Assembly (NCBI GenBank): GCA_002269645.1
Contig: NIVC01001810.1
Coordinates: 170,752 to 234,751, forward strand
DNA: 64,000 bases
DNA from: Macrostomum lignano
Taxonomy: Eukaryota
Direction of reading: 5' to 3'
The notes below the pieces were generated by a model, which saw only the letters and a list, made by a program, of their open reading frames with translations, was not told the DNA's origin and made no database searches. Below, in pieces: positions 6,091 through 57,200 of this stretch (position 1 is the first letter of the stretch; the number at the start of each line of letters is the position of its first letter). A program made the translations under genes and the position numbers.

Positions 6091-8275
<2,185 letters not shown>

Positions 8276-8849
8276 ATGTAACTAACTTTCCCACCGATAC
8301 ACTTGATGCTGAAGTCGTAGGCCATCAGCCTGTCTGCTCTGTGCCCGGTGCCGGGGCTGCCAGAGCCGCGGGGGTTGCCAGAGCTGGGGTGGCTGCTCGC
8401 ACAGACAGGCAGGCGGGTGGCCTTCAATCTCTCTCTGCAGTCTCTCACAGTGCCTGCGAACTTCTGTTTTGCATCACGCCACCTGAGTGCATCGCCCCAC
8501 CTCTCTGCTCGAGCCCTCCGAGTCTCCGAGCCCAGACCGCAGCCCCAGAACAATGGGGCTCTCCGGCCCCCTCACCGTCCCCGCCCTGCGCCTGTCAAAG
8601 CCAGCGGCGGCTCTGAGGTGGGCGGCAGTTTGAGTCTCAACTGTTGCCATGGTGACCGGGCAGATGGGGCAGGTGAGGCTTTACTAATTGCTGCCTCAGG
8701 TGAGGCTGGGCTGGGGAGGGCAGCTGCGCTTTTATGCCTGTTTTGTTATTCTCAGCTGCTGCGACCTGCCTGCTCAGAAAGTGCAAAGTAAAGAGTTGGA
8801 CTGCTTTGTGGCATCAGCCTGCTTGTGCTGCCTCCCTGTGCTGCCTCCC

Positions 8850-9170
8850 TCTGCTGTCTCCCTCTGCTGTCTCCCTCTGCTGTCTCCCTCTGGTGTCTCC
8901 CTCTGCTGTCTCCCTCTGGTGTCTCCCTCTGCTGTCTCCCTCTGCTGTCTCCCTCTGCTGTCTCCCTCTGCTGTCTCCCTCTGCTGTCTCCCTCTGCTGT
9001 CTCCCTCTGCTGTCTCCCTCTGCTGTCTCCCTCTGCTGTCTCCCTCTGCTGTCTCGCTCTGGTGTCTCTCTCTGCTGTCTCCCTCTGCTGTCTCCCTTTG
9101 CTCCCTCTGGTGTCTCCCTTTGCTGTCTCCCTGTGGTGTCTCCCTCTGCTGTCTCCCTCTGCTGTCTCCC
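8850..9170. repeat. 13-bp CT-rich minisatellite CTCCCTCTGCTGT
   Basis: Degenerate tandem copies. Confidence 0.9.
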
Positions 9171-10230: not shown

Positions 10231-11111
10231 AACTGACTGAAGGTGCCCGATAATAAAACCAATTGAAATTTGTCACCAGCCTCCTCCATTACTGAAATTA
10301 CTGAAATGATAGCTTAAATGTACTTAAACTGATTTCTATTAAAATATCCTCCTCCGTTAAACGACTATCTAATTATATCAGTATCGATATGATACCATTT
10401 CCGTCAATCAAGACTGTTTAATTGAAATCTATAAAAAGATGCTTTCTACTTTCAAAGTAACGGGTATGATAGTCTGTGGGAAAAAGCGTGGTAGACAGAC
10501 ATCCACTGGAGAGGCAGAGGGGCCAAGGAAGGTTATTGAAGGTTAAAAAACAGTTTTCTGCTTTTTATGCTTTTTCTGTGCGAAATTAAAATAGCCTAAA
10601 GCCTGATCCGGAAAATTTGCAGTTTTGCCATATAAGTTTCGACGCTGGCTTGCCAGAATTGTAGGATTTCTGCACATAGGTAGGTTAACAGCAAGTAGTC
10701 ACTGATGGCAGCTGTGTGTGAGCTCAGTGCCATAGACATGTCTGAGTCACCACAGTAATTTGATTTTATAAAGTAGCTCTGGAGAACAAAATGAGGAAAG
10801 CCAAGTCTCGCAGCAAGACGCTCGGCTAGAAGTTCTAAAATGTACGGGTATAACCACAGAATACTATTGTATTCAAGGGGTATAACACTCGCGTAATAAT
10901 CATTTACCAAATCTATGACTCCAGACACATTGTGCCACATAAAAGGGGTCACAGTTATGAGGAAGAGTCGGGTGAACATCAAGTAGTCACCATCGACTGA
11001 CAAGCACCAAAAAAGTGACACATGAGCATCAAATTTAATATATGACAGGCTTTGCTCAGATGCTGCAGCACGATTTTCAACGAGAACCCAAGCTGAACAG
11101 CTGAAAACTCT

Positions 11112-11996
11112 CTATGAGCTCTTCTGAGCTTTGCTCGGATCAAAGGAGACCTGCCGAGCGAGCTGTGACACGGTCTGAGCAACGCAATAGTACTTTATAA
11201 TTTCGGCCCTCTCGTTTCTGAACTCGTACGGCTTCTCCGTCATGTGCCGCTTCACGCGCATCATGATGCCCTCCAGGTGCTTCTCTGTGTAAAATCGCTC
11301 GATGTAGTGGCACAGGGTCTGCACGAAGACGCTACCAGTCTGAGGGTCGCGGTAGGACACCTGACCCTCTGTGGTAGGGAAGCAGAACAGGAAGTCACTC
11401 TCTGGAGGGTACAGGGCCGGGTTCTGCGCGAACTCTGGGGGCAGCTGGTCGACTGCCAGCCCCCTGTGCGTCACTTCGTCTTTGCCTCTGCCGCGGCAGG
11501 CCTGGACAAAGAAGATCTTCGGCTTGCCCGCCAGGTCGGGGCAGACGGAGGCCTGGAGGAGGGTTGGGAAATGTGTAGAAATTTGTAGAGCTGCAATGCT
11601 TTGCATCATATGCACAGATGAGCCAGACCCAGACCCACCTTGAACTTGGCTGCGAGCTCCAGAACCGGACTCAGCACTCCATGGCCATGGATAATGCAGT
11701 CCCTTCCCTGTGGGTCCTTGCGGCCGTGGGCCATCAGGAAGCAGACAAAACTGCCGTGCTTGGCGAGCTCCTTGGACTTCTTTGTCTCATTGAGGAAGTC
11801 ATCGATCTCTGCAGTTGTGGGATTTTGCTTCTCCATGATGGTGAAACTCAGCTTCCTGAAAAGCTTCCTCACTCGCTCCACATCCCGCTCCGAGCCTTTG
11901 CGCTCCTCTTCGCCGCTGCCGGCTGAGTACGCGTTGATGTTGATGATGAGGCAGAATCCCTGCGGGTTCGTCACCTGGTAGAAATCCTCGTGGAGT
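11112..11996 (-). CDS. Caspase catalytic domain (p20+p10), two exons
   Basis: Exons 11996-11639 and 11552-11112, separated by an 86-nt GT-AG phase-0 intron. Motifs: PQGFCLIININ, RKGSERD, FLMAHG (catalytic His), KPKIFFVQACRG (catalytic Cys), SDFLFCF, SYRDPQTGSVFVQ. The upstream acceptor TTCCAG at 11998-11997 is phase 2. Confidence 0.95.
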
Positions 11997-12342
11997 CTGG
12001 AATGCAGCAGGGTGATCGGGACGTGAGGCAAATAATATAGAACAGGAATCCCTGGAGACCTTTGCCTGATTCTGTTTTGCATGAGAAGCCTTTGGAATGC
12101 CGTGGAATGCTGTGGCACACTAAATATTATATATAATCTCTTCGATACAAAACTTATATTGAACATGTGAAATCTTTAAACAAATAAGGCTAGCTTTATG
12201 ACACAGACGCATGCACAGCTCAGTTGGTGGCGTAATATAGAATACACAGACACATTTGTGCTCATTTTAGAGTACTTCTGTCTCTGACTCATGCCAATCT
12301 GTCACTGACTCATGCCAATCTTTCATTCCTGCTCACTGACCC

Positions 12343-12383
12343 AGTCCCAGCTGGAGAAGGCGGGGTCCAGAGACGGCCTCGCA
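12343..12383 (-). pseudogene. 41-bp vestige of the kinase exon found in paralogs B and C
   Basis: Acceptor TTTCAG followed by TGCGAGGCCGTCTCTGGACCCCGCCTTCTCCAGCTGGGACT, identical to 48544 onward. Homology then stops and an in-frame TGA follows within a few codons. Confidence 0.85.
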
Positions 12384-12538
12384 CTGAAAGAGGAGAGGGT
12401 TGGGAGACTGAAGCAATGCAGGATGGCTGCAGAAATGGGGAACTGAGCAGGCAGGGAGAGTCTGTCAGCTGATCATTGTGAGCCACTCTTAGCTGAACCG
12501 AATGCAATTTCCCAAGTGAAAAGTGGAAGACGGCCTGC

Positions 12539-13890
12539 CTTGCTGACGGAGTCTCCTCGGACTGCAGCTGCAAGCCCGACATCGCCTGGCCCAGCCTCCG
12601 CTCTTCTCCATCAGGCTGGTGCCGCCGCTGCTCTGCGATCCACTCCCGAATCCGAGCTCCGTGCTGAGAGTTCCGCTCTGCGTAGTCGGCCACCGACTCG
12701 CCACCGGAATCGAGAAGGTCGAATGGGGCGAAGCCGAGAGAGTCCGCGATGAGGCGGAGCGAGTCCAGGTCGTGATACTGAGCAGCCAGGTGAGCAGGTG
12801 TGGCTCCGTTTGAGTCTTTTTCCAACAGACAGGCCGCCGGACCGAGCTCAGAGATGAGCCACTCGAGACAGGAGTTGGTCTCATTCATAGCAGCAAAGTG
12901 AATGGCAGTGCGTTGGACTAGGCCAGGCTGATGGAAGCAGTCGGATCCGAGGACTGATTTGAAGAACTGCATGGAATCGGCGCCCTGAAACTCAGCAGCG
13001 AGATGGACGGGAGTGTTTCCTTGTTGGTCTCGAACGGAGAGACAGTCGGTTCCGCACTCGTTTACCAGCCACTTGAGACAGGAGTTAGTGGCTTCATTCA
13101 TAGCCGCACAGTGAATGGCAGTGCGTTGGACTTGGCCAGGCTGATGAAAGCAGTCGGATCCGAGGACTGATTTGAAGAACTGCATTGAATCGGCGCCCTG
13201 CTTCCAAGCAGCGATATGGACGGGAGTGCTTCCTCGTTGGTCTCGAACGGAGAGACAGTCGGTTCCGCACTCGTTCACCAGCCACTTGAGACAGGAGTTA
13301 GTAGCTTCATTTAAAGCGGCTTTGTGAATGGCAGTTTGTTGTAATAAGCCAGGCTGATGGAAGCAGTCGGATCCGAGGACTGATTTGAAGAACTGCATGG
13401 AATCGGCGCCCTGCTTCCAAGCAGCGAGATGGACGGGAGTGTTTCCTTGTTGGTCTCGAACGGAGAGACAGTCGGTTCCGCACTCGTTCACCAGCCACTT
13501 AAGACAGGAGTTAGTAGCTTCATTCTCAGCGGCCCAGTGAATGGCAGTGCGTTGGAGTCGGCCAGGCTGACGGAAGCAGTCGGATCCGAGGCTGCGGTGA
13601 ATGAGCTCCATCCATGACTCATCTCGACACAAGGCAGCCAGGTGCACAGGAGTGTTGCCTCTTTCGTTGGTGCAGGTGAGGCAGTCGGGTCCGAGTTTCT
13701 TAATAAGAGCCTCGAAGCAGCGGAGACCGTCGGATAGATAGGTCACGTGATGAGCAATGGACCGCTTCAACTGGTTGATGTTGAGTGCGAAGTTGGTGTC
13801 GAGCTGCCGGCAGAGGGGGAGCAGGCGGCCTGCGTCCTTGGCACGGAGGGCTGCAGCGACTTCTTCGCGCACTGAGGCTTGCCGGGCCAT
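12539..13890 (-). CDS. Ankyrin-repeat exon A (about 450 aa), predicted to splice to a downstream effector exon, probably the caspase
   Basis: Open frame with repeated TPVHLAA and TAIHxAA ankyrin motifs in 71-aa di-repeat units. Ends at a phase-2 AAG|GCAGGC donor shared with paralog C. Confidence 0.9.
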
Positions 13891-13939
13891 GTCTGCAGAG
13901 TGGCGCGGACTGCGAGCGCGCTGGGCTGCTCTGTGCCGC

Positions 13940-13946
13940 TTTTATA
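13940..13946 (-). promoter_or_regulatory. TATA box of ANK gene A
   Basis: TATAAAA about 50 nt upstream of the ATG at 13890. It is preceded by a CCGCCC GC-box and followed about 30 nt later by an Inr-like CGCAGT. Confidence 0.6.
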
Positions 13947-14087
13947 TGGGCGGTGCGGAGAGGCGGGCTGAGCGGCATCCGAGCCAGACTACTGTGAGTA
14001 GGCAAAGCAGAGTAAACTGCAGATGCTGTGCTGAGTCTGTCAGTTCTGAGCTCGGAACTCAGCGAGACCGACTGCTGGCCGCAGGTG

Positions 14088-14466
14088 CGCGACACGGGAA
14101 GGTGAGCGACACGGGAAGGTGAGCGACACGGGAAGGTGAGCGACACGGGAAGGTGAGCGACACGGGAAGGTGAGCGACACGGGAAGGTGAGCGACACGGG
14201 AAGGTGAGCGACACGGGAAGGTGAGCGACACGGGAAGGTGAGCGACACGGGAAGGTGAGCGACACGGGAAGGTGAGCGACACGGGAAGGTGAGCGACACG
14301 GGAAGGTGAGCGACACGGGAAGGTGAGCGACACGGGAAGGTGAGCGACACGGGAAGGTGAGCGACACGGGAAGGTGAGCGACACGGGAAGGTGAGCGACA
14401 CGGGAAGGGTGAGCGACACGGGAAGGTGAGCGACACGGGAAGGGTGAGCGACACGGGAAGGTGAGC
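14088..14466. repeat. 17-bp minisatellite GACACGGGAAGGTGAGC
   Basis: About 22 copies; each contains AAG|GTGAG on the + strand. Confidence 0.97.
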
Positions 14467-14980: not shown

Positions 14981-15209
14981 AGAGTGCTCCATCACCGGTA
15001 CAAAGTGCTCCATCACCGGTACAGAGTGCTCCATCACCGGTATAGAGTGCTCCATCACCGGTACAGAGTGCTCCATCACCGGTACAGAGTGCTCCATCAC
15101 CGGTACAGAGTGCTCCATCACCGGTACAGAGTGCTCCATCACCGGTACAGAGTGCTCCATCACCGGTACAGAGTGCTCCATCACCGGTACAGAGTGCTCC
15201 ATCACCGGT
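14981..15209. repeat. 21-bp minisatellite AGAGTGCTCCATCACCGGTAC
   Basis: About 11 tandem copies. Confidence 0.97.
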
Positions 15210-15631: not shown

Positions 15632-16318
15632 GAGATGCAGCAGTGGGAGATGCAGTGTGCGGGCACAGCATGGGTGCAGCAGTGGGGAGATGCAGTGTGC
15701 GGGCACAGCACGGGTGCAGCAGTGGGAGATGCAGTGTGCGGGCACAGCATGGGTGCAGCAGTGGGAGATGCAGTGTGCGGGCACAGCAGGGGTGCAGCAG
15801 TGGGGAGATGCAGTGTGCGGGCACAGCACGGGTGCAGCAGTGGGAGATGCAGTGTGCGGGCACAGCACGGGTGCAGCAGTGGGAGATGCAGTGTGCGGGC
15901 ACAGCACGGGTGCAGCAGTGGGGAGATGCAGTGTGCGGGCACAGCACGGGTGCAGCAGTGGGAGATGCAGTGTGCGGGCACAGCACGGGTGCTGCAGTGG
16001 GAGATGCAGTGTGCGGGCACAGCACGGGTGCAGCAGTGGGAGATGCAGTGTGCGGGCACGGCACGGGTGCAGCACTGGGAGATGCAGTGTGCGGGCACAG
16101 CAGGGGTGCAGCAGTGGGGAGATGCAGTGTGCGGGCACAGCACGGGTGCAGCAGTGGGAGATGCAGTGTGCGGGCACAGCACGGGTGCAGCAGTGGGAGA
16201 TGCAGTGTGCGGGCACAGCACGGGTGCAGCAGTGGGGAGATGCACTGTGCGGGCACAGCACGGGTGCAGCAGTGGGGAGATGCAGTGTGCGGGCACAGCA
16301 GGGGTGCAGCAGTGGGAG
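15632..16318. repeat. 39-40-bp minisatellite GGGAGATGCAGTGTGCGGGCACAGCACGGGTGCAGCAGT
   Basis: About 17 tandem copies. Confidence 0.97.
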
Positions 16319-18729: not shown

Positions 18730-20820
18730 TTGCAAACGACTTTCTGCCACAGGCGGCACTGGTCTCTTGGAATCGAAAATTGCTAGAAGCGGTTTGTGGC
18801 CAGTGACCAGGATGAAATTTCGACCCAACAGGTACTTATGGAACTTCTTAAGTCCAAATATAATTACCAATGCTTCATTTTCAATTTGGGCATAGTTATT
18901 TTCAGCAGCTGACAGTGTTCTAGAAGCGTAGGCGATTGGCCTGTCTCCGGTCTTTGTTTCATGAGAAATGACCGCACCAAGACCGTAAGGTGAAGCGTCA
19001 TATTCTAGCTTCAGATTCTTGGACAGATCATAGTGAGTCAGCACCTTGCTTGAAGTAAGTTGATCTTTGACTTGCCTGAACGCGGATTCGAACCGGCTGG
19101 CCAGTCGAAATCCTTTTCTTTTCGAAGTCGCAAGTAAAAGGGGTGCATCAGAGTTGCCAGATTCTGGATGAATTTTCCATAATAATTTATCAGTCCAATC
19201 GAAGCCCTTAGCTCGGACACATTTCGTGGGCGTGGAGCCTCATGGATAGCTCTGATCTTGTCCTCAGTTGGGTGAATTCCCTTTTCATCCATCCTGTATC
19301 CAAGGAAAGTGACAGATGTCTGCTCGAATTTACACTTCGACTTCTTTAGTCTGACACCTCGCTCTCGAAAGCGTTGCAAAACCTTCTTCAGATTTTGCAA
19401 GTGTTCCTCGGAATTCTTGCCAACTACTAAAACATCGTCAATGAAGCAGATGACTCCGCTCAGTCCTTGCAGCATCTTGGCCAACTACTAAAACATCGTC
19501 AATGAAGCAGATGACTCCGCTCAGTCCTTGCAAAATCTTGTCCATGGCCATCTGGAAAACTACCGGTCCACTGGCTAGTCCGTATTGCAGCCGCTGGCAC
19601 TGAAACAATCCCTTGTGCGTATTGAGCACAATGTACTGTTTGGAGTCTTCGTCCAATTATAGCTGCAGAAATGCTTGAGTAGCGTCCAACTTAGTGATAT
19701 ACTTGCCTCCATTTAGAGCACTAAACAGATCTTCCTGCCTGGGCAATGGGTACTGGTCGACAATCAGAACCTTGTTCAGTGTCGTCTTGAAATCCGCAAA
19801 TTGTCACTGATCAAAGCGAACAGGCTTTTTGGTTATCAAAATTTCTACGAAGTAAGCAGGGTTACCTCTGTCAAATACCCGATTAATGCTTGGTGGTGAT
19901 ACTCTGGCTTCTTGGCCACACGGTTCATTCGCGAAGTACTCCGTAACCTGCTTGTTGCGAAATCCTTTCAGAGCCACGGTAGACTTACATGCAACTCCCA
20001 GGTGTCCTTCTTTTCCACACTTGTTGCACTTTTTATTACGATGTGGGCAAGCATTTGCCAAGTGATCTGGGCCAGAGCAACGGTAGCACCTGCGAGTAAA
20101 TGTAGGCTTCTCCTTGTTTCCTTCCCTGATTTGGCGGGTCTCAGTAGCGCGTCGAAAAGCTGGCTTCCGCTTCTGGAGCTGGTCGCTTCGAGTGCCAACT
20201 CTGTTCACTGCTGGAGCAGATCCTTGGATGCTGCGAGCGTTCTTGAATGCATTCTCAATGACCTGAGCCTCCTCAACTGTGACATTGAATGTCGAGTCGT
20301 CTTTTAGAGTGGTCAACAGTTTGTTCAACATATGCTCGTCTCTGAGGCCGAAGTCAAAAGCATCGCGGAGCGCTTGATCCAGGAATGCGTCAAACTTGCA
20401 GCTGGCACTGAGGCTTCGAAGACTTACAACGAAGTCGGCTATGGTCTCGCCATCCTTCTGCTTCCTTTGAGCGAATACGAATCGTTGAGCAATAGAGCTC
20501 AATTCCGGTGTAAACTGGTGCCGGAGTGCAGTCAGTAGCTCCTCGCTGGCGCAATTGCGTTCCTCAGAATTGAGTAGGCCTCTTCTCTGATCAGGGTCAG
20601 CAGGTTCGCCTTTTCTCAGCTTCATCAGTGACTTTCTTGGCCACATGAAAATACTCCAGCCGCTCCTCGTACTCCTCCCAGTTCCGAGGGTTGCTGCAGT
20701 TGAATGGTTCGATAACCGGCCTCGTCGCCATTGTTGTGTTTGTATCGTATTTCCTAAAAGCCGTTTTTTATAAAAGCAAGCACGCAGGCTCGAAGCCTAA
20801 GGAACGCAGCTTTCACAACA
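18730..20820 (-). mobile_element. Degenerate Ty3/gypsy (Mag-like) LTR retrotransposon, internally deleted and 3'-truncated
   Basis: 89-bp LTR TGTTGTG...CACAACA at 20732-20820. PBS TGGCGACGAGG (complementary to tRNA-Ser GCU) at 20730-20720. Gag with two CCHC knuckles at 19804-20646, RT (FIDD) and RNase H (DASPYGLGAV, YAQIENEAL). Most of the protease and all of the integrase are missing. Confidence 0.9.
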
Positions 20821-30527: not shown

Positions 30528-33500
30528 TGTGGCAGCCAGTCGCTTTAGTTTCTTATTCATGCATAAATTATTGTCTATGGACAAACTCAAATATACTTGT
30601 AAAGGGTGTGTGGCTGCGCCCACAGTCTCGCCAAGCGCGAATACTCCTAATACATTCAAACACGCAACATGGTGTCAGAGGTAAAAGACTCCAATTAGAT
30701 AATTGCTTTGTGCGTCGTTTTTGGTGGCAACTACAGCGGCATGTCCGACGCAGCTGGACTGCGACCTCCAGGGCCCATGGTATTCGATGAGGCCAAGTCA
30801 GAACGCTGGAGAAAATGGATCGGCGCATTCAATTTATACATGACCGCCACAAAGCGCGACAAGGAGGCTGACAGCATGAAGAATGCGATTCTGCTGACCG
30901 CCATCGGTGAAGAAGGCAGGGACATATTCGAGACATTCGAACTCTCTACTGACTCTGCTCACAAAGACATCATCGACAAATTCGAGAAATTCTGCATTCC
31001 TCTGGACAGCGAAACATTTGATCGCTACAAGTTTAGAATGCGTAAGCAGGAGCAGTATGAAGATTTTGATCACTTCATAAATGAGCTACGATTGTTAATA
31101 AAGCGATGCAGTTTTTCAAAGCCTAAAAATGGGCAATGCATTGACGATGCCATGCTTCGAGATCAGATAGTATATGGGGTTCATAATTCAGCACTCCGTG
31201 AACGGCTCCTTGAGGAAGAGAAGCTGACACTGGAAAAGGCTATTGTTCTGTGCCGTGCCACCGAAGCTTCAAAGATGCAAGCCAGGCAGATGACAGGTAT
31301 AAAGAGTGAAAACAGAAACTCTGTCAGTCGAATTGTAAAAGACCCTGATCACAAGTTGCAGCAATCAACCAGAGCCAAGTCCAAGTCTATCACACGAAAG
31401 GCTCCTACAGGACAACAGGCATGCAGATACTGCGGCAAGAACCACAAATTTGGTCACACCAACTGCAGTGCCTATGGCAAGACCTGCTTGAACTGTGGAC
31501 AAAAGAACCATTTTAAGGCCATGTGCCGGAAAGAGAAAGCAAAACAATCAAAACAGATTCGTACAGTTGAAGATGAGCTTACTGACGTGACTGAAACATC
31601 GAATTCTTACCAAGCTGCTGCATGGGATGTAAGTAAATATTCTATGAATTATTATAATGGAAATGAAGTGAAAGCCGTTTCAAGAACAGTTGTGCCGCTA
31701 GACACTGAGTTTGGACACATCGTCAACTACAAAATTGATACCGGCGCTGATGTGAATATTATGTCCGAGAAACGTTTAAGAACAATCACAGACAACCCAT
31801 TAGAAAAAGACCACACCAGACTATCAGTGTATAACAATCAGACGCTTAATGTGAAGGCAAGATTAAATTGCGACTCTCGCACAAAGACGCCGTGCATATA
31901 GTAGAATTCACCATCATTGAGGACGACAATACACCTCTATTAGCGACCGACACAGCTGAGAAATTAGGCCTGATTCAAATCCTCAACGTAACAAAGACTA
32001 CAGATAAAGAAGTGCTGACGGAATCAAAGATCTTTAGGGAATACAGCGATGTGTTCGAAGGAATTGGATGTCTGCCTGGAGCGCATCACATTTCATTGAG
32101 AGAAGGTGCAATACCGAAAGTCCAAGGCCCAAGGAAAGTCCCATTTGCGGCTATGAAGGCCCTGCGTGAAGAGCTTGACCGTTTGCAGAGCCAAGGAATA
32201 ATAACGAAATGCGACCAGCCGGCAGATTGGGTGTCCAATGTTGTTATCGTCTGGAAGAAGGATAACTGGATTAGACTGTGCTTGGATCCAAAGAATCTAA
32301 ATGATGATATTGTCAGAAATCGATACCCCATTCCAACTTATGACGAGATGATTAGCGAGATGACAGGAGCAAAATACTTCTCAACATTTGATGCTAAGTC
32401 TGGCTTCCATCAAGTTCAGTTGGATCAAGAAAGTTCACTTCTTACTACATTTCACACTCCGTTTGGTGTTTACAAATGGAATCGACTAGCTTTTGGTCTA
32501 AAGGATGCACCTGAAGCTTACCAAAGGCGCATCAAAGAAGAAGTGACAAGTCAAGTAGAAAAATCTGCTAACTACATCGATGACGTCATAGTATGGGGAA
32601 AGACTCGGGAAGAGCACGACCAAGCAGTTTGAAATCTTTTTGGAGCAATGCAGGAAAAAGAACCTGACTCTGAACAGGCAAAAGACGAGCATTGGCAAAA
32701 CCGAGCTTCGATTTCTTGGACACATACTAACTGACAAAGGTGTGAAAGTAGATCCACAAAAAGTAAACAGCATCAAAGAAATGCCGCACCCAAACAGTTT
32801 TGAACAGCGTGCTGAAAAGCAAGCGCAGCTCCAACGGTTTATTGGTAGTGCAAATTACTTGTCAAGATTCATAGCAAACTTTTCTGCACTGACAAGTCCT
32901 TTGAGGGACTTCATGAAGAAAGAATCCGAATGGGTGTGGACCAATGACCAAGAAAAGGCGTATCAAGGAATCAAGCAGTGCCTCTGCGAAGCACCTGTGC
33001 TTGCGCCATTTGACCCGAATAAAGACCTAATTTTATCTGTCGACGCCAGCAAAGATGGCTTGGGAGCAGCACTATTGCAGGAAGGACATGTCATTGAGTA
33101 TTCATCATCAGCTCTAACATCCGCTCAAAAGAAATATGCCCAGATAGAGAAGGAAATGCTTGCGATAGTATTTGGCTGTCGAAGGTTCAGACAGTATCTC
33201 TGGGGACGTAGAGTCTCCGTCGAGTCTGACCACAAACCGCTGCAGTATATTATGAAGAAGCCAATGGATGAACTATCGGCTAGAATTCAACGTCTGATAC
33301 TCAAGATCCAAGAATTTGACTTAGACATGCAATACAAACCGGGAAGATATCTTTATTTGGCTGATACATTAAGCCGTGCTTTCTTGCAATCTGTGCATTC
33401 GGCGAATGACATAGACTCTGAGCTTGAGAATCAAATCTTGGGTATCCAAAAGGTTTGTCTATCGGAAGACCTACTTAAGAAGATCCAGGAACACACATAT

Positions 33501-35035
33501 GCAGATTCAACTTGCCATGCGGTCAAGAATCGCATTCGCGAAGGTTGGCCGGAACTCAGAAACCAATTGCCAGAACAACTAAAGCCTTTCTGGAATGTTC
33601 GTCACGATTTAGCCGAGCACGACAGATTAATTATGAAAACCAGCAAGATATTTATACCACTGACCATGCGCCACGAATTCTTGAACATCATTCATGAAGG
33701 ACATCAAGGCATTGAAAAAACACTGCTAAAAGCAAGAGGATCGGTATACTGGCCTCAGATGCGTCGGGACATCCAGAACTACATAGCAGCATGCGATGCC
33801 TGCCAAAGCAGCCAATCCCGACCACAGAAAGAAACAATCATTCAAAGTCCGCATCCTGATTATCCATTTCAAGAGTGCGCGACTGACCTGTTCGATTTTA
33901 AAGGTCGAAAATTCATAGTTTTAGTGGACAGATACAGCCGAGGGATCTGTGCAGATCCATTAAGATCAAATACAGCTGAGTTTGTTATCCTGCGATTAAA
34001 GAAATATTTCTCCACATTCGGAACACCTGAGAAGTTGCGATGCGACAACGGACCGCCATTCTCGTCCAACGCATTCCAATTATATGCTAAATCAAGCGGG
34101 ATAGCGCTTGTAACATCATCACCAAGATATCCACAGTCCAATGGATTAGCGGAGCGAGCTGTGCAAACAGTGAAATGCTTCTTGAAAAAGAATGAAGACT
34201 TTGAAAAAGCAATGCTTCACTACCGTAATACTCCGATTGAGCGTGGGTTACCGACCCCAGCAGAGCTACTGATGGGAAGGAAATTGAGGTACGAACTACC
34301 TGTACCAGTAATGGAATTGATACCAAAACGAACATGGACGAAGAATGATTTGGAAACACTGAACGCCATGCGAAGGAAGGACGCGATTCGCTACAACAGT
34401 ACAGCTAGGGATTTGAAGCCACTGGAGACTGGAGAGCAAGTCTGGTTGTACGAGGACAAGAGATAGTGGATTCCAGCAGAAATTCAATCGCGGGATCATA
34501 TGGATCCAGAACGATCGTACCAAGTGCAAACTGCTGATGGTAAATGCTACAGAAGGAACCGACGATTTTTAGCACCCAGAGTTGCGAACTCCAGACTGTC
34601 TGCAATACCGAAACATCTAGCGCTACAGCGACAGTAGATATCTCAGAGAGTCATCTGAAAGATTCAACTGCATCATCCGGAATTCAGCCAACTCATGAGC
34701 ATCCAACAACAAGTAATCCTGCTGAAGATGCTAACCGACAAACGACCAATGCTGACACAAATGCGACATATGTGACACGATCTGGTCGTACTGTCAAACA
34801 GACGAGATTCTATCAAGCTGTTTAATGATGAATTTTTTTGTTTATGAACAAACTATGCAATTAACGAACAATGTTCTTTTGAAAAAAGGGGGATGTGGCA
34901 TTCAGCCGCTTTAGTTTCTTATTCATGCATAAATTATTGTCTATGGACAAACTCAAATATACTTGTAAAGGGTGTGTGGCTGCGCCCACAGTCTCGCCAA
35001 GCGCGAATACTCCTAATACATTCAAACACGCAACA
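30528..35035 (+). mobile_element. Near-complete Ty3/gypsy LTR retrotransposon, 4.5 kb
   Basis: 142-bp LTRs (TG...CA) at 30528-30669 and 34894-35035. PBS TGGTGTCAGA (tRNA-Leu-like) at 30670, PPT GAAAAAAGGGGGA, imperfect TSD AACCC/AGCCC. Gag from ATG 30741, protease DTGAD, RT YIDD, RNase H DASKDGLGA, integrase HHCC and DDE (DLF, CDNG, AER). Frameshifts near 31857 and 32630 and a TAG at 34464. Confidence 0.97.
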
Positions 35036-49637: not shown

Positions 49638-50611
49638 TAGAAGGCATGAGGGGGCTTCTGGGACAAAATTTTTCACCTCCTCCATAATCCTTTTAAATCC
49701 ATCCATATTATCCCTGACAGAATCAGAAAAAAGGGGGGTCGCACTCGCTCACAAAACATCCTCCACAATCCTATTAAATCCATCCATATTATCCCTGACA
49801 GAATCAGAGCATTATCCCTGACAGAATCAGAGCATAACAGTAGGACACCTGTTATGCTCACTGACACTGACATAATCCACTGACATCCACCCATAGCATC
49901 TTCGAAACAATCAGAAAATAATCTGCATTCTTCTCCCCACATTCAATCCGCAACGTGCTACCACATCCCTAAAACTTTAAATCCCCTAACCCAGGGTCCT
50001 TACCCATTGAAAAAAAATAAATAATTTTATTATTCATTAGTAAGAATTATATATTTATTAACGGTTGCACAACTGATAGGATATGTATTAACTATTACAA
50101 GATTATCAAAAATGGTAGAAAAAACAGACACTATGTAGGATCTGCGTTAGAATTCTTCAACAACATACAGAGCCAGCCTAGCGTTCCTTTGAGCCAGCAG
50201 CTAGATTCTCTAACGCCGTTAGAATTTTCTATGTGAAAATTTGGTGTGCCCAAGCTTATCATGCGGGAAGCTTTTCACATAGAAAATTCTAACGGCGTTA
50301 GAAAATTTCTACCCCCCTCTATTTAACCATACAGAGCCAGCCTAGCTTTCCTGTGAGCCAGCAGCTAGATTCTCTAACGCGTTAGAATTTTCTATGTGAA
50401 AATTTGATGTGCCCAAGCTTATCTTGCGGGAAACTTTTCACATAGAAATTTCTAACAGCGTTAGAATTTAAAACCCACCGACTGAGTTGCACACAGTACT
50501 GAGAAAATTGCTACCCTCCTCTACTTAACCAATCGGCTGTCTCCAGTTGTTGAATCTTCTCTTTGAAATTCTAACGCGTTAGAAAAATTCTAAATGAACT
50601 GAATTTAAAAA

Positions 50612-52644: not shown

Positions 52645-53682
52645 ATGACAGATCAGAAACTTAAAAAACTCTACTACAGCGACAAAGGATTCTTTGTAGG
52701 CAAAAATGCCGTTAGTAAACTCATGGAGCTGAGTAAGGAACCAAAAGCTACAGTAGAAAAATGGCTCTCTAAGCAGGCTCTCTTTCAAGTCTATTTCCCA
52801 CCAGTAAAATTTACAAGACCTCACTTTAACATCTATAAACCTAACGAGGCGCACCAAGCAGATCTTTTGTTTCTCCCCAACGACTCAGGCTACAAGTATG
52901 CTCTTACAATTACAGACGTTGCCTCCAGATATAAGGAAGCGAGACCGCTTAAGACGAAGAAGTCAGAAGCAGTTGCAGCCGCCCTCCAAGATATTTATAA
53001 AAACTCTCCGCTCACATACCCCCAAATCTTTATGACCGACCCGGGTAAGGAATTCATGGGTGTAGTGAAATCCCTTATGGAAAAGAAAAACACAGAGATT
53101 CGCTATGGCAGAACAAACTTGCACAGAGACCAGGCTTTTGTGGAAAGATTCAATCTAACTCTAGCCAAGAGACTATTCACTAAGCAGACAGCGCAAGAAC
53201 TCAAACTGAGTGCGGGGCAGTACTATACCAAGTGGACAGAAAGACTCCCCACTGTTATAGAGCAACTGAACAATGAAGTCACACGCATGACTGGATTGAA
53301 ACCATCCCATGCAATTAAACAAGACACTGTCGAACTTAAGGCATCTCATAGAACAGACAACAACACGACAACCCCACACAACACACACAACACAAAACAC
53401 ACCTCGAACTACCCTAAGCTTCCAGGAGTTGAATCACCATACATACTGACAAACTCTGAGTTTCTACGCTTTTTATATCTACCTGGAGAGCTAGAGAAAG
53501 ACACCAAAAGAAGAGCTACAGATCCATACTTCAGCCTTGATGTGCATAAAATAGACAGACATTTTACCTCCGACTCCGGTGACTATTACTTTTTATCTCA
53601 AGCCTTTAACCCTAAATCCCCCACGCGGTCATTCACTAGAGCTGAACTCCTAGTGATACCAGCTGACACAGAAATTAATTAA
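52645..53682 (+). CDS. Polinton retroviral-like (rve) integrase, intact 345 aa
   Basis: DDE triad in HQADLLFL, MTDPGKEF and FVERFNLTL; also YKYALTITDVASRY. Confidence 0.95.
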   Translation: MTDQKLKKLYYSDKGFFVGKNAVSKLMELSKEPKATVEKWLSKQALFQVYFPPVKFTRPHFNIYKPNEAHQADLLFLPNDSGYKYALTITDVASRYKEARPLKTKKSEAVAAALQDIYKNSPLTYPQIFMTDPGKEFMGVVKSLMEKKNTEIRYGRTNLHRDQAFVERFNLTLAKRLFTKQTAQELKLSAGQYYTKWTERLPTVIEQLNNEVTRMTGLKPSHAIKQDTVELKASHRTDNNTTTPHNTHNTKHTSNYPKLPGVESPYILTNSEFLRFLYLPGELEKDTKRRATDPYFSLDVHKIDRHFTSDSGDYYFLSQAFNPKSPTRSFTRAELLVIPADTEIN

Positions 53683-54277: not shown

Positions 54278-57200
54278 ATGCCAAAAGCCAATCCAGCAAG
54301 AGATTTAGTCAACAAATATTTTTCAAAAGGCGTCTCATTTCAAGACAAAAGTAATTCACTAAGAGAAGCATGCAAACAAAAGTTCAACACCGACCCTGGT
54401 CACCTGGGAAGCTATGAAAAACAGTTGGAAATCATCAATCAATTAGAATCAAACCAGTATGCGCCTATAAAAAATTCTGCAAAGGAACACCAAGAGAGGA
54501 GTCGCAACTTAGTTAACAAATATGAAACTCTCACTGGTGAAAAAGCAAAGTACCCACAAAATAAGCAGGAACAAGAGAAATTAGAGCAATTAATCCATTT
54601 AAAAGAGTCGGAGCTTGCCACTGAAGAGATTAATTTTGCACAGACGAAGTTTACAGAACATTACATAGAGTACACAATCCCAATAAACGGCACCAACGGT
54701 ACCACCGCAAACATCTACGACTATAAAGACAGCATCCAATCAGTTGTTGATCACACACTCAAAACACGCAAGACTTTAAACTACAGATATCATTCAAGAT
54801 TGCGTTTTATATGCCTGCAAAACCCACTGAGCATCTCGAGTATTACATGACAACAAAGGCAAAGCCATTCACCCCAACAGACACACTGGATCCTTTCCTT
54901 CAAGATGTCACTAAGAAAATTGAAGCGTTTACATCCAGAGGTTCCGGATGGGTCGTGGGAGGGATTCAAAGAGCGACTGTCATGGTCATGAAATATGACC
55001 CACTTAAAGCCTCCTCTTATATAGAGCTCCCGCATAAGCTAGCCGGCAAAAAAGCTTGCATAAATGTTAAAAATAAAGACAATTGCTGTGCTCTATGGGC
55101 AGTTCTTTCTGCACTTTTTAGTGTACCTCACCACCCCGAAAGAACCTCAAATTATCAAAATTATTTCAACTACTATCTCATTGAATGCGAAAAGAAGGGA
55201 ATCAGGTTTGACAAAGGAGGCTGGCGATCTCTCAGATCCCAAAGCTAGAAGAAGTGTTTAATAACAAAATTAGAATCACAGTCTTTGAGTGGAGTGAAAA
55301 AACTGAGAAAGTTCAACCGGTCAGATGTAGCAAAGACGTTTTAGATCCGAGGGGAAAAGGCGGACTGAAGTGGATCTTCTAGTGATTGGTAATTTACTAG
55401 AGGAGGCTCACTATGTTTGGATTAAAGATCTTTCAAGACTCATTCACAAGCAGTTGAATAATCATCACGAGGCTGTTGCCATCTGCCGCTTGTGCCTTAA
55501 GCATTACAGTGGACCTGAACGCTTTGAAAAGCTAACAGAGCATGAATTATCATGCGAGGATCACCCGACAAACTGCTCTCTTCCTTCAGCTGAAGAGAAG
55601 TATCTCCGTTTAAGAACTATCACAAGATGGAGAAGCTCCCATTTGTTGTATATGCTGATTTCGAATGCTCAATCATGCCGGAAACACAAAAACAAACTCA
55701 AACTCAAAAACATATCCCCAATTCAGTAGCATATGCCTTTATTAATACAAAAGGACTTGTTGAGTATAATTATTTCTTTGGAGAGCAGTGTGTGGAGCAG
55801 TTTATTGCCAGAATGTTAGAGTTGCAAAAAGTGATTAGCACCCTTCAACCTGTTCCAATAATGATGACTGAGGAGGATGAAAGCAATTTCCTATCAGCAA
55901 CTCATTGCCACATCTGCAGGAAACATTTAACTTGCACTAATATTAAAAACCCCACCGTTAGGGACCACTGCCACTTTACTGGGAAATTTAGAGGTGCAGC
56001 GCATAACACCTGTAATCTAAAGCTAAAATCGAACATTCATGATCTAACGATATTTTGTCACAACGCAAAGAACTATGACATGCATTTAATAGTTGAAAAA
56101 ATCGGCATGATTCCAGACATACACCTTGATTGCATCGCAGAGAACAAGGAGAAGTTTAAGTGTGTTGATATTAAACAGGATAATTCGGGTACAGGTAAAA
56201 TAAGACTGAAGGATTCATATCAATTTCTAGCTGCCAGTCTAGACGAACTAAGCAAGAATCTAAAAGATGAACAATGTACATATACAAAGATGTTTGCAAG
56301 TAAAATTAACAACACTGATGAATCATTTAAACTCCTGAGAACCAAAGGCTTCTACCCCTATGAAAATATTACTGGGTATCACGTATTTGAAGAAGGTTTA
56401 CCACCACAGGAGAAGTTCTTTTCAAAGCTAACAGACTCTGGAATCTCTGACAAAGACTATGAGCACGCGAAGCATGTCTATAGTTACTTTAATTGTCAAA
56501 ACTTCTTCCAGTATCACCTGCTTTACCTCTTCACAGATGTGTTTCTGCTGGCTGATGTGTTTGAAACCTTCAGATACACCTGGTACACAGCATATGGCCT
56601 CGATCCAGCACATTATGTGTCTCTGCCTGCCACTAGCTGGGAATCTTTGCTTAAAATGAAATGGGATCAAGATCCAGATTGGTACATTGAACTTCTTACA
56701 GACATTGACATGTACAATTTTGTCGAATCGTCAAAGCGAGGGGGATCTCAATTTGCACATAGGTATGCAAAAGCAAACAATCCCTACATTGAATCTTACA
56801 ATAAGGAGCAGCCCTCAAACTACATTACTTACTTGGACGCTAATAATCTCTACGGGTGGGCGATGAGTCAAGATCTTCCAGTTAGAGATTTTCGATGGCT
56901 ACCCTCATCAGAATTAAATGGGACTTTTCATTGGCTGCCATTTATGAGGTTGATGTTTACATTCCACCAGAGCTTCACGACTATTTCTCTGACTTTCCAC
57001 CCTTCCCAGAGAACATCAAGTGCCCGAAAATAATCGAAACTCCCAATGATAATAATGGAACTTGGCACCTGTCAGGAACAGAAAAAGAACATACAGAGAA
57101 ACTAACACAGAATCTAAACAACAAGACACGTTACAAAATCCATTACAAACTGCTTCAATATTTTATCTCACTTGGTTGCAGGGTCACCAAAGTTCACCGG

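What the first reader, a model, noticed from the sequence alone, without database searches (positions are those of the whole stretch)
11112..13890. Predicted 716-aa ankyrin-repeat-caspase fusion protein
Seen: joining the ANK exon (1352 nt, phase 2) to the caspase acceptor at 11996 gives a continuous frame ...ETPSA-R-LHEDFYQVTNPQG... through intact AHG and QACRG sites. No CARD or DED prodomain is visible, and a TATA promoter sits before the ANK ATG. Known: animal initiator caspases normally use death-fold prodomains. Inference: this is a caspase activated directly by ligand binding to an ANK array. The model requires skipping the nearer dead kinase acceptor at 12383.
Basis: partly seen in the sequence, partly recalled or inferred. 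Interest (0 to 1): 0.88.

Follow-up and report, generated by a model that had tools for sequence, protein, structure and literature searches.

The report
Flatworm ankyrin-repeat caspase gene, already annotated
The predicted 716-residue ankyrin-repeat–caspase protein is real and is already in GenBank as a "hypothetical protein" of the flatworm Macrostomum lignano; it was made when the kinase half of an ankyrin–kinase gene was replaced by a caspase, and how it is activated is still untested.

Summary
On the minus strand, exons 13890-12539, 11996-11639 and 11552-11112 give an open 716-aa frame. It has about 9-11 ankyrin repeats, a roughly 35-residue disordered linker and a complete caspase domain with AHG and QACRG. 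There is no CARD or DED.

The window is 100% identical to M. lignano contig NIVC01001810.1. GenBank PAA63849.1 (BOX15_Mlig013715g1) equals this model plus 6 codons of 5'UTR. That annotation was built from RNA-seq, so the 12539-to-11996 junction is already public. The donor is GC, not GT, and the same GC donor serves the intact ankyrin-kinase paralogue.

The gene is a chimera. Its promoter, ankyrin exon, intron and 41-43 nt of kinase exon come from an ankyrin-kinase gene. A relic of that gene's 3'UTR minisatellite follows, then a caspase cassette from a paralogous ankyrin-caspase gene.

"ANK caspases" are published for parasitic flatworms (2014, 2024). M. lignano has its own clade of caspases with ankyrin, ankyrin-kinase or Ras/Roc N-termini.

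The ankyrin array is near-identical between repeats except at nine positions, eight of which are canonical binding-surface positions. Activation by ligand binding is plausible but untested. This is a new member of a known kind, of moderate interest.

The parts
13940..13946 (-). TATA box (TATAAAA) of the ANK-caspase gene
   Evidence: Pattern located. The annotated transcript-derived CDS starts at 13908, 32-38 nt downstream. The promoter region is 94-95% identical to that of the ANK-kinase gene in L002.
13891..13908 (-). 5'UTR codons (PRHSAD) included in the 'partial' GenBank CDS PAA63849.1
   Evidence: P0202 equals PRHSAD plus the 716-aa model, and window 13908-13891 translates to PRHSAD.
12539..13890 (-). 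Exon 1 CDS. It holds the N-terminal cap, about 9-11 ankyrin repeats, the C-terminal cap and the linker (aa 1-451, phase 2).
   Evidence: ORF and translation. Pfam Ank families. Nine T[PA]xH motifs. AF2 pLDDT is about 90-97 for aa 10-425 as a helical-repeat solenoid, and below 50 for aa 427-462. It is 92-95% identical in nucleotides to the ANK exon of the ANK-kinase gene in L002.
12857..13591 (-). Tandem array of 3.5 copies of a 213-nt (71-aa, double-ANK) unit with hypervariable codons
   Evidence: TRF gives period 213, 3.5 copies and 90% matches. Entropy peaks at unit positions 4, 5, 7, 12, 15, 41, 43, 51 and 52.
11997..12538 (-). Intron 1 (542 nt, GC-AG), a composite of relics
   Evidence: The donor is AAG|GCAGGC and the acceptor is ...CTGCATTCCAG|A. 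The junction equals that of GenBank PAA63849.1.
12384..12538 (-). Ancestral ANK-kinase intron, retained intact
   Evidence: Near-identical to L002 8227-8377 and to window 48703-48553.
12341..12383 (-). Relic of the first kinase exon (41-43 nt). Its acceptor CTCTTTCAG|T is intact, and GG|GTCAGT follows it.
   Evidence: Homology to L002 ends at window 12343. The peptide is [15 protein letters not shown], against [15 protein letters not shown] in P0002. Using it gives a 470-aa ANK-only product, or a frameshifted 530-aa product if the 43-nt mini-exon is included.
12277..12325 (-). Relic (2-3 units) of the 21-nt minisatellite that starts at the stop codon of intact ANK-kinase genes
   Evidence: It matches L002 10260-10539 at 90-96%. 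The sequences are compared, and two unit-like matches are located.
10945..12188 (-). Caspase cassette. It holds the last 140-190 nt of an ANK-caspase intron, two caspase exons, the internal intron and 167 nt of 3' flank.
   Evidence: 91% identical to L001 11447-12698, the gene of P0003 (Mlig018347).
11639..11996 (-). Exon 2, covering most of the caspase large (p20) subunit. It includes LHED (aa 452-455), the S1-pocket Arg in ERKGS, and the AHG catalytic His (11731-11723).
   Evidence: The alignment to caspase-7 is, and family invariant residues are.
11553..11638 (-). Intron 2 (86 nt, GT-AG)
   Evidence: Splice contexts are. It has 0-1 differences from the paralogues in L001 and L004.
11112..11552 (-). 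Exon 3. It holds QACRG (11504-11490), the inter-subunit linker with LAVD (11459-11448), the p10 part with SYRD, and the stop at 11114-11112.
11034..11039 (-). Candidate polyadenylation signal ATTAAA, 73 nt after the stop codon
   Evidence: Pattern located. This is a sequence inference only.

Best explanation
This is the Macrostomum lignano gene BOX15_Mlig013715g1 (GenBank PAA63849.1). It is a three-exon, TATA-driven gene on the minus strand.

SHOWN: It encodes a 716-aa protein built of an ankyrin-repeat array, a roughly 35-residue disordered tether and a complete Asp-type caspase domain. The gene is a chimera. A P0002-type ankyrin-kinase gene lost its kinase exons. Left behind were its promoter, its ANK exon, its GC-AG intron, 41-43 nt of kinase exon and a stub of its 3'UTR minisatellite. 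This remnant now lies in front of a caspase cassette copied from a paralogous ankyrin-caspase gene. The old GC donor splices past the relic acceptor to the caspase acceptor, in frame. The protein belongs to a Macrostomum-specific clade of caspases whose N-terminal regions are ANK, ANK+kinase or Ras/Roc instead of CARD or DED.

INFERRED: The ANK array is a diversified protein-recognition module. Its repeats are almost identical except at nine positions, which lie on the canonical target-binding face. Binding of a target or scaffold would concentrate or release the tethered caspase zymogen. The zymogen would then process itself at conserved Asp sites, LHED/F at the prodomain boundary and LAVD/Q in the inter-subunit linker. 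The same kind of array drives a kinase in sister genes, so the family would work as 'one sensor type, interchangeable outputs'.
For: Identity and structure:
- The window is 100% identical over 22,797 bp to NIVC01001810.1, and P0202 equals PRHSAD plus the model.
- The annotation was derived from RNA-seq with StringTie/TACO (isoform fraction 0.75), a de novo transcriptome and TransDecoder (PMC5730564).
- Pfam finds C14 and ANK and no death-fold domain.
- The catalytic His and Cys and the S1-pocket Arg/Gln/Arg equivalents are conserved.
- AF2 gives a confident ANK solenoid and a disordered segment at aa 427-462.

Chimeric origin:
- Homology breakpoints are at 12343 and 12188.
- The minisatellite relic is shown.
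- The ANK C-cap and linker are 88-90% identical to ANK-kinase proteins, but only 43% identical to the tail shared (97-100%) by the other eight ANK-caspases.
- The same GC donor is used in the annotated ANK-kinase gene.

Family:
- ANK-caspase paralogues are seen.
- Further ANK-, ANK-kinase- and Ras/Roc-caspases of M. lignano are seen.
- They form a clade with NJ bootstrap 83, and the hypervariable-ANK caspases form one with bootstrap 100.

Recognition role:
- Variation is concentrated at nine of 71 unit positions. Eight fall on ANK-consensus positions 2, 3, 5, 13 and 14 (P=3.7e-8).
- At those codons dN=0.59, against 0.0065 at the other 62 codons.
Against: - No read-level RNA data could be inspected, so the share of transcripts using 12539>11996 rather than the fully intact and nearer acceptor at 12383 is unknown.
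- An older annotation models the caspase alone (A0A1I8IJR4, partial, starting in the intron).
- dN/dS of the caspase against paralogues is 0.98, 0.59 and 0.47 on only 19-27 substitutions. The caspase cassette appears homogenised by gene conversion, because the internal intron has 0-1 differences while the flanks differ by 13-17%. Constraint on this copy is therefore not demonstrated.
- The hypervariable sites were chosen by their variability, so their dN/dS of 1.9 is partly circular.
- AF2 confidence for the caspase part is low because the alignment is shallow.
- Whether the enzyme behaves as an initiator or an executioner, and whether ANK recruits, inhibits or merely localises it, is untested.
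Confidence: 0.62

Rival explanations
1. The locus is young evolutionary debris. The chimera arose by deletion and juxtaposition in a repeat-rich, duplicated genome. It is transcribed, but mostly yields an ANK-only 470-aa product via acceptor 12383, or a frameshifted, decay-prone mRNA that includes the 43-nt mini-exon. The fusion protein would have no selected function.
For: - The relic acceptor and its intron are essentially identical to functional copies and lie 387 nt nearer to the donor.
- A usable donor GG|GTCAGT follows the relic.
- Caspase dN/dS is 0.5-1.0.
- The window also holds other broken pieces of the same family: an orphan kinase half and a 5'-truncated copy.
- One sister subfamily has lost the catalytic Cys (QAGRG).
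Against: - The only CDS kept for this locus by an RNA-based pipeline that discards minor isoforms is the in-frame fusion.
- All three exons are free of stops and frameshifts, and all catalytic and S1-pocket residues are intact.
- A 43-nt exon is poorly defined and is expected to be skipped (inference).
Confidence: 0.2
2. The caspase is a separate gene with its own promoter inside 'intron 1'. A conserved TATA-like GAGATTATATATAATA lies at about 12135-12117, with in-frame ATGs at 12166 and 12082. The ANK exon would make an independent ANK-only protein.
For: - The caspase frame stays open 57-67 codons upstream of the acceptor in both the window and paralogue L001.
- The TATA-like motif is conserved among paralogues.
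- UniProt A0A1I8IJR4 models the caspase alone, beginning ITLLHSR in the intron.
Against: - The upstream 'peptide' is not conserved. Between window and L001 the reading frame shifts and is restored, and ATG 12082 is absent in L001 and L004.
- A0A1I8IJR4 has no start codon.
- None of the stand-alone models exists in the 15-billion-protein collection.
- All nine annotated relatives join the ANK exon to exactly this acceptor.
Confidence: 0.07
3. The fusion is an assembly or annotation artefact. A mis-join of an ANK-kinase locus and an ANK-caspase locus in a highly duplicated genome would have been bridged by multi-mapping RNA-seq reads.
For: The Mlig_3_7 assembly is highly redundant, with 180-312 Mb duplicated (PMC5730564). 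The family members are 90-95% identical.
Against: - The join is not at a shared repeat. It runs through a degenerate kinase-exon stub, a decayed minisatellite stub and about 88 nt of unique sequence.
- The window's caspase differs from every other copy and branches outside the other three.
- An independent earlier annotation contains the 100%-identical caspase.
- A spliced read across ...CAGCAAG|ACTCCACGAG... can map only here, because the exon-1 end is kinase-type.
Confidence: 0.04

Closest known systems
ANK caspases of platyhelminths (Genome Biol Evol 2024, PMC11463336; first noted in Schistosoma, Lee et al. 2014 as cited there)
   Same: Both are caspases whose long pro-domain is made of ankyrin repeats instead of CARD or DED, and both occur in flatworms. 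The published authors also propose an initiator-like role through ANK-mediated protein interaction.
   Different: The published clade is described as restricted to parasitic flatworms and absent from free-living ones. For M. lignano only a 'kinase-like pro-domain' caspase was reported. Here the host is free-living. The caspases form a Macrostomum-specific clade in my NJ tree. The ANK array is a hypervariable tandem array shared with a kinase family. I had no bona fide parasite ANK-caspase sequence, so common descent is untested. The two long parasite caspases retrieved have no ANK.
M. lignano paralogues Mlig018347, Mlig020959, Mlig011118, Mlig014209 and Mlig032136 (P0003, P0005, P0211, P0203, P0001)
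   Same: They have the same three-part architecture, the same caspase acceptor and split-codon phase, and the same 71-aa ANK unit. Their caspases are 92% identical to this one.
   Different: Their ANK exon ends with a different C-cap and linker (43% identity) and a canonical CC|GTAAGT donor. Their intron lacks the kinase and minisatellite relics.
M. lignano ANK-kinase family, e.g. BOX15_Mlig023755g1 (P0002, locus L002)
   Same: Promoter, upstream minisatellite, ANK exon, GC donor, intron and the first 41 nt of the kinase exon are 92-95% identical.
   Different: The kinase domain (about 1.8 kb) is deleted and replaced as coding 3' end by a caspase.
Executioner caspases 3 and 7 (closest solved structures, e.g. 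4hq0, 1shj, 5jft)
   Same: E=5e-31 over the whole catalytic domain. The His/Cys dyad, QACRG, and the R-x-G and S-[WY]-R pocket motifs are shared.
   Different: The match is roughly 30% identity. This protein has a 456-aa N-terminal region, where caspases 3 and 7 have short pro-peptides. A profile of the family hits caspase-8 about as well. M. lignano has a separate caspase-3/7-like gene, Mlig031854, that groups with caspases 3 and 7 instead.
Death-fold initiator caspases (caspase-8/-10 DED; caspase-2/-9 CARD)
   Same: Both have a long non-catalytic N-terminal protein-interaction region joined by a flexible linker, which is the logic of recruitment-driven activation (inference).
   Different: No CARD, DED or PYD is detectable. 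Dimerisation-driven activation has not been tested.
Repeat-array receptors with high internal repeat identity and hypervariable contact sites (fungal NLR-like ANK/TPR/WD proteins; designed ankyrin repeat proteins as the structural reference). This comparison rests on my own knowledge, not on a tool result.
   Same: Both have tandem repeats kept nearly identical, with variation focused on binding-surface positions. Repeat number also varies between paralogues, from 4 to 11 units.
   Different: There is no NACHT or NB-ARC NTPase. The output domain is C-terminal. No link to immunity is shown.

Membership tests
Caspase (peptidase family C14A) | Peptidase_C14 domain above the curated threshold | tested here: met
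   PF00656 scores 147.4 bits against a cutoff of 21.4, E=6.8e-43, aa 464-677.
Caspase (peptidase family C14A) | Catalytic His (xHG) and Cys (QACxG) | tested here: met
   AHG is at aa 540-542 and QACRG at aa 587-591. Both align to the caspase-7 motifs. His is invariant across the family alignment, and Cys is kept in all but one aligned sequence, which reads QAGRG.
Caspase (peptidase family C14A) | Asp-specific S1 pocket (Arg179, Gln283 and Arg341 equivalents) | tested here: met
   R in ERKGS, Q in QACRG and R in SYRD are invariant in alignment A1 and align with the caspase-7 residues.
Caspase (peptidase family C14A) | Cleavage after Asp and autoprocessing | not testable with these tools
   This needs recombinant enzyme and peptide substrates.
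Platyhelminth ANK caspases (PMC11463336) | Ankyrin repeats N-terminal to the caspase domain in one polypeptide | tested here: met
   Pfam finds Ank families plus C14 on the spliced product. The product is identical to the RNA-based GenBank CDS.
Platyhelminth ANK caspases (PMC11463336) | Placement inside the monophyletic ANK-caspase clade of parasitic flatworms | tested here: inconclusive
   No verified parasite ANK caspase was retrievable. The supplement is not held, and the candidates P0234 and P0300 lack ANK. No parasite ANK+C14 protein appeared among the listed hits of the two domain searches or of the full HMMER scan. The NJ tree puts the M. lignano clade apart from them.
Initiator caspases | Death-fold pro-domain (CARD, DED or PYD) | tested here: not met
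   No such Pfam hit at E<=0.01.
Initiator caspases | Activation by induced proximity or dimerisation | not testable with these tools
   This needs a forced-dimerisation or kosmotrope assay.
Executioner caspases 3/7 | Short pro-peptide and orthology to caspase-3/7 | tested here: not met
   The N-terminal region is 456 aa. The best PDB hits are caspases 7 and 3. In the NJ tree, however, the true caspase-3/7-like gene of M. lignano (Mlig031854) groups with caspases 3 and 7 and this clade does not.
M. lignano ANK-kinase family (P0002 type) | ANK exon, GC donor and intron homologous to the family | tested here: met
   92-95% nucleotide identity up to window 12343. The tail is 88-90% identical to P0002, P0209 and P0035.
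M. lignano ANK-kinase family (P0002 type) | Protein kinase domain | tested here: not met
   Only 41-43 nt of the kinase exon remain. There is no Pkinase hit in the product.
Hypervariable repeat-array receptors | Near-identical tandem repeats with variation confined to binding-surface positions | tested here: met
   Nine of 71 positions carry the variation, and eight fall on ANK positions 2, 3, 5, 13 and 14 (P=3.7e-8). dN is 0.59 at those codons against 0.0065 elsewhere.
Hypervariable repeat-array receptors | Demonstrated ligand recognition or immune function | not testable with these tools
   This needs binding and challenge experiments.

The most novel reading that the evidence does not exclude
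The hypervariable ankyrin arrays of M. lignano could be a diversified intracellular recognition repertoire, in effect an innate-immune-like receptor family. The arrays would be wired by exon swapping at a single phase-2 intron to interchangeable outputs: a kinase for signalling or a caspase for cell death. Mlig013715 would then be a kinase-to-caspase output swap caught with its scars still visible. ANK-prodomain caspases would also not be an adaptation to parasitism. They would instead have arisen, possibly independently, in a free-living early-branching flatworm.
Probability: 0.25. Interest if true: 0.75.

Novelty: new member of a known kind. Interest (0 to 1): 0.4.

Why it matters
Caspases with non-death-fold pro-domains are a route to learning how cell-death proteases can be wired to new inputs. 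This locus matters in three ways.

1. It shows, with the scars preserved, how such a protein is made. An intron-phase-compatible effector cassette replaced another behind the same sensor exon.
2. It contradicts the published view that ANK caspases are confined to parasitic flatworms (PMC11463336).
3. It belongs to a family whose ankyrin arrays show the signature expected of a diversified binding repertoire. M. lignano is transgenic- and RNAi-tractable, so the sensor-plus-swappable-output idea can be tested directly.

The gene itself is already in GenBank and the architecture is already named in the literature. The finding is therefore an extension, not a discovery of a new kind.

Tried and rejected
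- I made exact look-ups of the fusion, the read-through ORF, the ANK-to-12383 product and two stand-alone caspase models. None is in the protein collection under those exact sequences. The fusion was found only as a cluster member carrying 6 extra N-terminal residues.
- I considered the open frame upstream of the caspase acceptor as coding sequence. I rejected this because the frame is not conserved between paralogues and ATG 12082 is missing in them.
- I tried dN/dS of the caspase as a test of function. There are too few substitutions and the cassette is homogenised by gene conversion, so the result is not decisive.
- I looked for ANK+C14 proteins outside Macrostomum with two domain-level searches and one full HMMER scan. 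Only two mollusc proteins with different layouts turned up: Batillaria nSTAND3-ANK-ZU5-caspase and Haliotis caspase-ANK. Parasite ANK caspases could not be retrieved, and the 2024 paper's supplement is not held.
- I ran AlphaFold2 on the whole protein. The ANK part is confident, but the caspase part is too poorly modelled to say anything about inter-domain contacts or zymogen state.
- I tested a 'circle re-insertion' idea for why the orphan kinase half lies upstream of the ANK half. Window 23827-27500 matches nothing fetched, so I dropped it.
- I searched the literature for the gene name. Nothing was found.
Full report
**What is in the sequence**

The feature lies on the minus strand. An ATG at 13890 opens a 1352-nt exon that ends at 12539 in phase 2. 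Joined to 11996-11639 and 11552-11112, it gives an uninterrupted 716-codon frame with the junction ...ETPSA-R-LHEDFYQ....

Pfam finds a caspase domain (Peptidase_C14, E=6.8e-43, aa 464-677) and ankyrin families (Ank_2, E=9.8e-34). It finds no CARD, DED or PYD. AHG (aa 540-542) and QACRG (aa 587-591) are intact. A TATAAAA box sits at 13946-13940.

The first intron is therefore of the minor GC-AG class.

**Whose gene it is**

All close protein hits are from the free-living flatworm Macrostomum lignano. The caspase part is 100% identical to UniProt A0A1I8IJR4. That cluster also contains GenBank PAA63849.1, BOX15_Mlig013715g1, 722 aa. Its sequence is PRHSAD followed by exactly the 716-aa model, and PRHSAD is the translation of window 13908-13891, which is 5'UTR.

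The contig carrying that gene, NIVC01001810.1 of assembly GCA_002269645.1, is 100% identical to window 23908-1112 over 22,797 bp. That assembly's annotation was built from RNA-seq. The pipeline used STAR, StringTie and TACO with an isoform-fraction filter of 0.75, mapped de novo transcripts, and called ORFs with TransDecoder (PMC5730564).

The model starts about 32-38 nt downstream of the TATA box, as expected for a TATA-driven start. I could not inspect the reads themselves, so isoform proportions remain unknown.

**How the gene was made**

Window 15000-12343 is 92-95% identical to the locus of an annotated ankyrin-kinase gene, BOX15_Mlig023755g1 (P0002; locus L002). The shared stretch covers the upstream minisatellites, promoter, ANK exon, the same GC donor, the 155-nt intron, its acceptor and the first 41 nt of the kinase exon. 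Read from the donor, the relic encodes [15 protein letters not shown], against [15 protein letters not shown] in P0002.

Homology then jumps to a 21-nt minisatellite. In intact ankyrin-kinase genes this minisatellite begins at the stop codon (L002 10260-10540; window 47112 downwards and 22499 downwards). Two to three degenerate units remain at 12325-12277.

After about 88 nt that match nothing, window 12188-10945 is 91% identical to the 3' part of an ankyrin-caspase gene (Mlig018347, P0003, locus L001). This covers the last 140-190 nt of its ANK-caspase intron, both caspase exons, the internal intron and 167 nt of 3' flank.

The protein tells the same story. The C-terminal cap and linker of the window's ANK exon are 88-90% identical to ankyrin-kinase proteins. 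They are only 43% identical to the tail that all eight other ankyrin-caspases share at 97-100%.

The locus is thus a one-off kinase-to-caspase swap behind an ankyrin-kinase sensor exon. Both parental gene types end their ANK exon in phase 2, so the new splice is in frame.

**Alternative products**

The relic acceptor at 12383 is identical to functional copies. Its use would give a 470-aa ANK-only protein. If the 43-nt stub is treated as an exon (GG|GTCAGT follows it), the result is a frameshifted 530-aa product.

The caspase frame is also open for 57-67 codons upstream of the acceptor, with ATGs at 12166 and 12082 and a conserved TATA-like motif. Between paralogues, however, the reading frame shifts and is restored, and ATG 12082 is absent. 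This stretch therefore evolves as intron. The older stand-alone model A0A1I8IJR4 has no start codon and begins inside that intron.

**The caspase**

The closest solved structures are caspases 7 and 3 (E about 5e-31). The R-x-G, QACRG and S-Y-R pocket motifs align with theirs. A family profile hits caspase-8 about equally well.

An Asp immediately before the FYxVT start of the domain (LHED|F here) is invariant across subfamilies. The inter-subunit linker carries LAVD|Q. These are candidate processing sites by inference only.

Pairwise dN/dS against paralogues is 0.98, 0.59 and 0.47, on only 19-27 substitutions. The internal intron has 0-1 differences while the flanks differ by 13-17%, which points to gene conversion. 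Constraint on this particular copy is therefore not shown.

AlphaFold2 models aa 10-425 as a confident helical-repeat solenoid (pLDDT about 90-97). It models aa 427-462 as disordered and the caspase part poorly, for lack of alignment depth.

**The ankyrin array**

Exon 1 contains 3.5 copies of a 213-nt unit (71 aa, two ankyrin repeats) at 90% identity. Paralogues carry 4 to 11 such units.

Across 34 distinct units, variation is concentrated at nine positions. Eight of them are ANK-consensus positions 2, 3, 5, 13 and 14. From my own knowledge of designed ankyrin repeat proteins, these form the target-binding face. The chance probability is 3.7e-8. The ninth, position 10, lies one helical turn before positions 13 and 14.

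On 14 nucleotide units, those codons have dN=0.59 and dS=0.31. The other 62 codons have dN=0.0065 and dS=0.037. The sites were chosen by their variability, so the ratio is partly circular. The roughly 90-fold contrast in dN is not.

**The wider family and the literature**

A full HMMER scan, Pfam and cluster names show that M. lignano has further ANK-caspases (Mlig009377, Mlig000705/009621, A0A1I8GQ20). It also has an ANK-kinase-caspase (Mlig018903, three copies) and a Ras/Roc-caspase (Mlig000293).

In a neighbour-joining tree all of these form one clade (bootstrap 83). That clade is separate from the worm's caspase-3/7-like gene. The hypervariable-ANK caspases form a clade with bootstrap 100, in which the window's copy branches first.

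Outside Macrostomum I found ANK+C14 only in two mollusc proteins with different layouts.

A 2024 paper describes 'ANK caspases' as a clade of parasitic flatworms. It was first noted in Schistosoma, is said to be absent from free-living flatworms, and is proposed to be initiator-like. For M. lignano the paper reports only a kinase-like pro-domain caspase (PMC11463336). I could not obtain verified parasite sequences, so common descent is untested. No paper mentions Mlig013715.

**Verdict**

The observation and the gene model are correct, but they are already public. The architecture is of a published kind.

Four things are not in the literature I could search:
- ANK caspases exist in a free-living flatworm.
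- This copy is a scarred kinase-to-caspase swap.
- Its ankyrin array carries a hypervariable binding face.
- That array is shared with a kinase family.

Ligand-triggered activation remains a reasonable hypothesis, not a result.

Noticed in passing
window 23823-22499 (-), with 3' flank to about 18577: An orphan kinase half-gene. It holds the last ~84 nt of the ANK-kinase intron, both kinase exons (86-94% aa identity to P0002 residues 745-1026) and the 21-nt 3'UTR minisatellite. No P0002-type ANK exon lies in front of it. It is the complement of the ANK half that now drives the caspase, and the two halves overlap by about 133 nt of the parental gene (L002 8291-8426). It is not annotated in GenBank. 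Window 23827-27500 matches nothing fetched.
   Followed up: partly
window 49641-47112 (-), minisatellite continuing below 47112: A third P0002-like copy. It has the ANK repeats, the same GC donor and intron, both kinase exons (82-95% aa) and a long 21-nt minisatellite. Homology to L002 stops at 49641 inside the repeat array, so it appears to lack the N-terminal cap and the promoter.
   Followed up: partly
window 29199-27340 (-): A 619-aa open ANK exon ('ANK-B') of a different subfamily. It is 81% identical to the ANK-kinase protein P0021 (Mlig007832) and 49% to P0002. The frame ends in a stop, and no kinase exon of its own type lies nearby.
   Followed up: partly
window 17966-17175 (-): A 263-aa ORF with a strong tyrosine/serine-threonine kinase match (PK_Tyr_Ser-Thr, E=1.8e-64). 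It lies in sequence that is also the upstream neighbour of the ANK-kinase gene in L002 (L002 1-838, 98% identical).
   Followed up: no
window 14083-14466, 14981-15209, 15636-16318, 8826-9170, 8000-8287: Dense minisatellites flank the gene: 17-nt x22.5 just upstream of the promoter (also present in L002), 21-nt x11, 39-nt x17, 13-nt x27 and CTAA x71. They create long spurious ORFs on both strands.
   Followed up: no
window 32640-34466 (+), 19804-20646 (-), 55627-57033 (+), 52645-53682 (+): Mobile-element remains. These are an LTR-retrotransposon pol (RNase H plus integrase), a gag-like zinc-knuckle ORF, a protein-primed type-B DNA polymerase ORF and a separate integrase ORF. The last two are reminiscent of a Polinton/Maverick element.
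   Followed up: no
window 12166-11997 (-) and L001 11446-11645: The caspase reading frame stays open for 57-67 codons upstream of the acceptor in both paralogues. A conserved GAAGAGATTATATATAATA motif lies inside it. The encoded peptide is not conserved, because the frame shifts and is restored.
   Followed up: yes
proteins P0334 (Mlig018903), P0327 (Mlig000293), P0125/P0212; not in the window: M. lignano also encodes an ANK-kinase-caspase (three gene copies), a Ras/Roc-caspase and an ANK-caspase subfamily whose catalytic Cys is replaced (QAGRG). The first is probably the 'kinase-like pro-domain caspase' mentioned in PMC11463336.
   Followed up: partly
L001 10001-12562 and 21065 onwards: Two hypervariable-ANK caspase genes (Mlig018347 and Mlig020959) lie in tandem about 8.5 kb apart on contig NIVC01000874.1. 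Extra ANK units lie upstream of the annotated start of the first, so its start codon may be mis-called.
   Followed up: no
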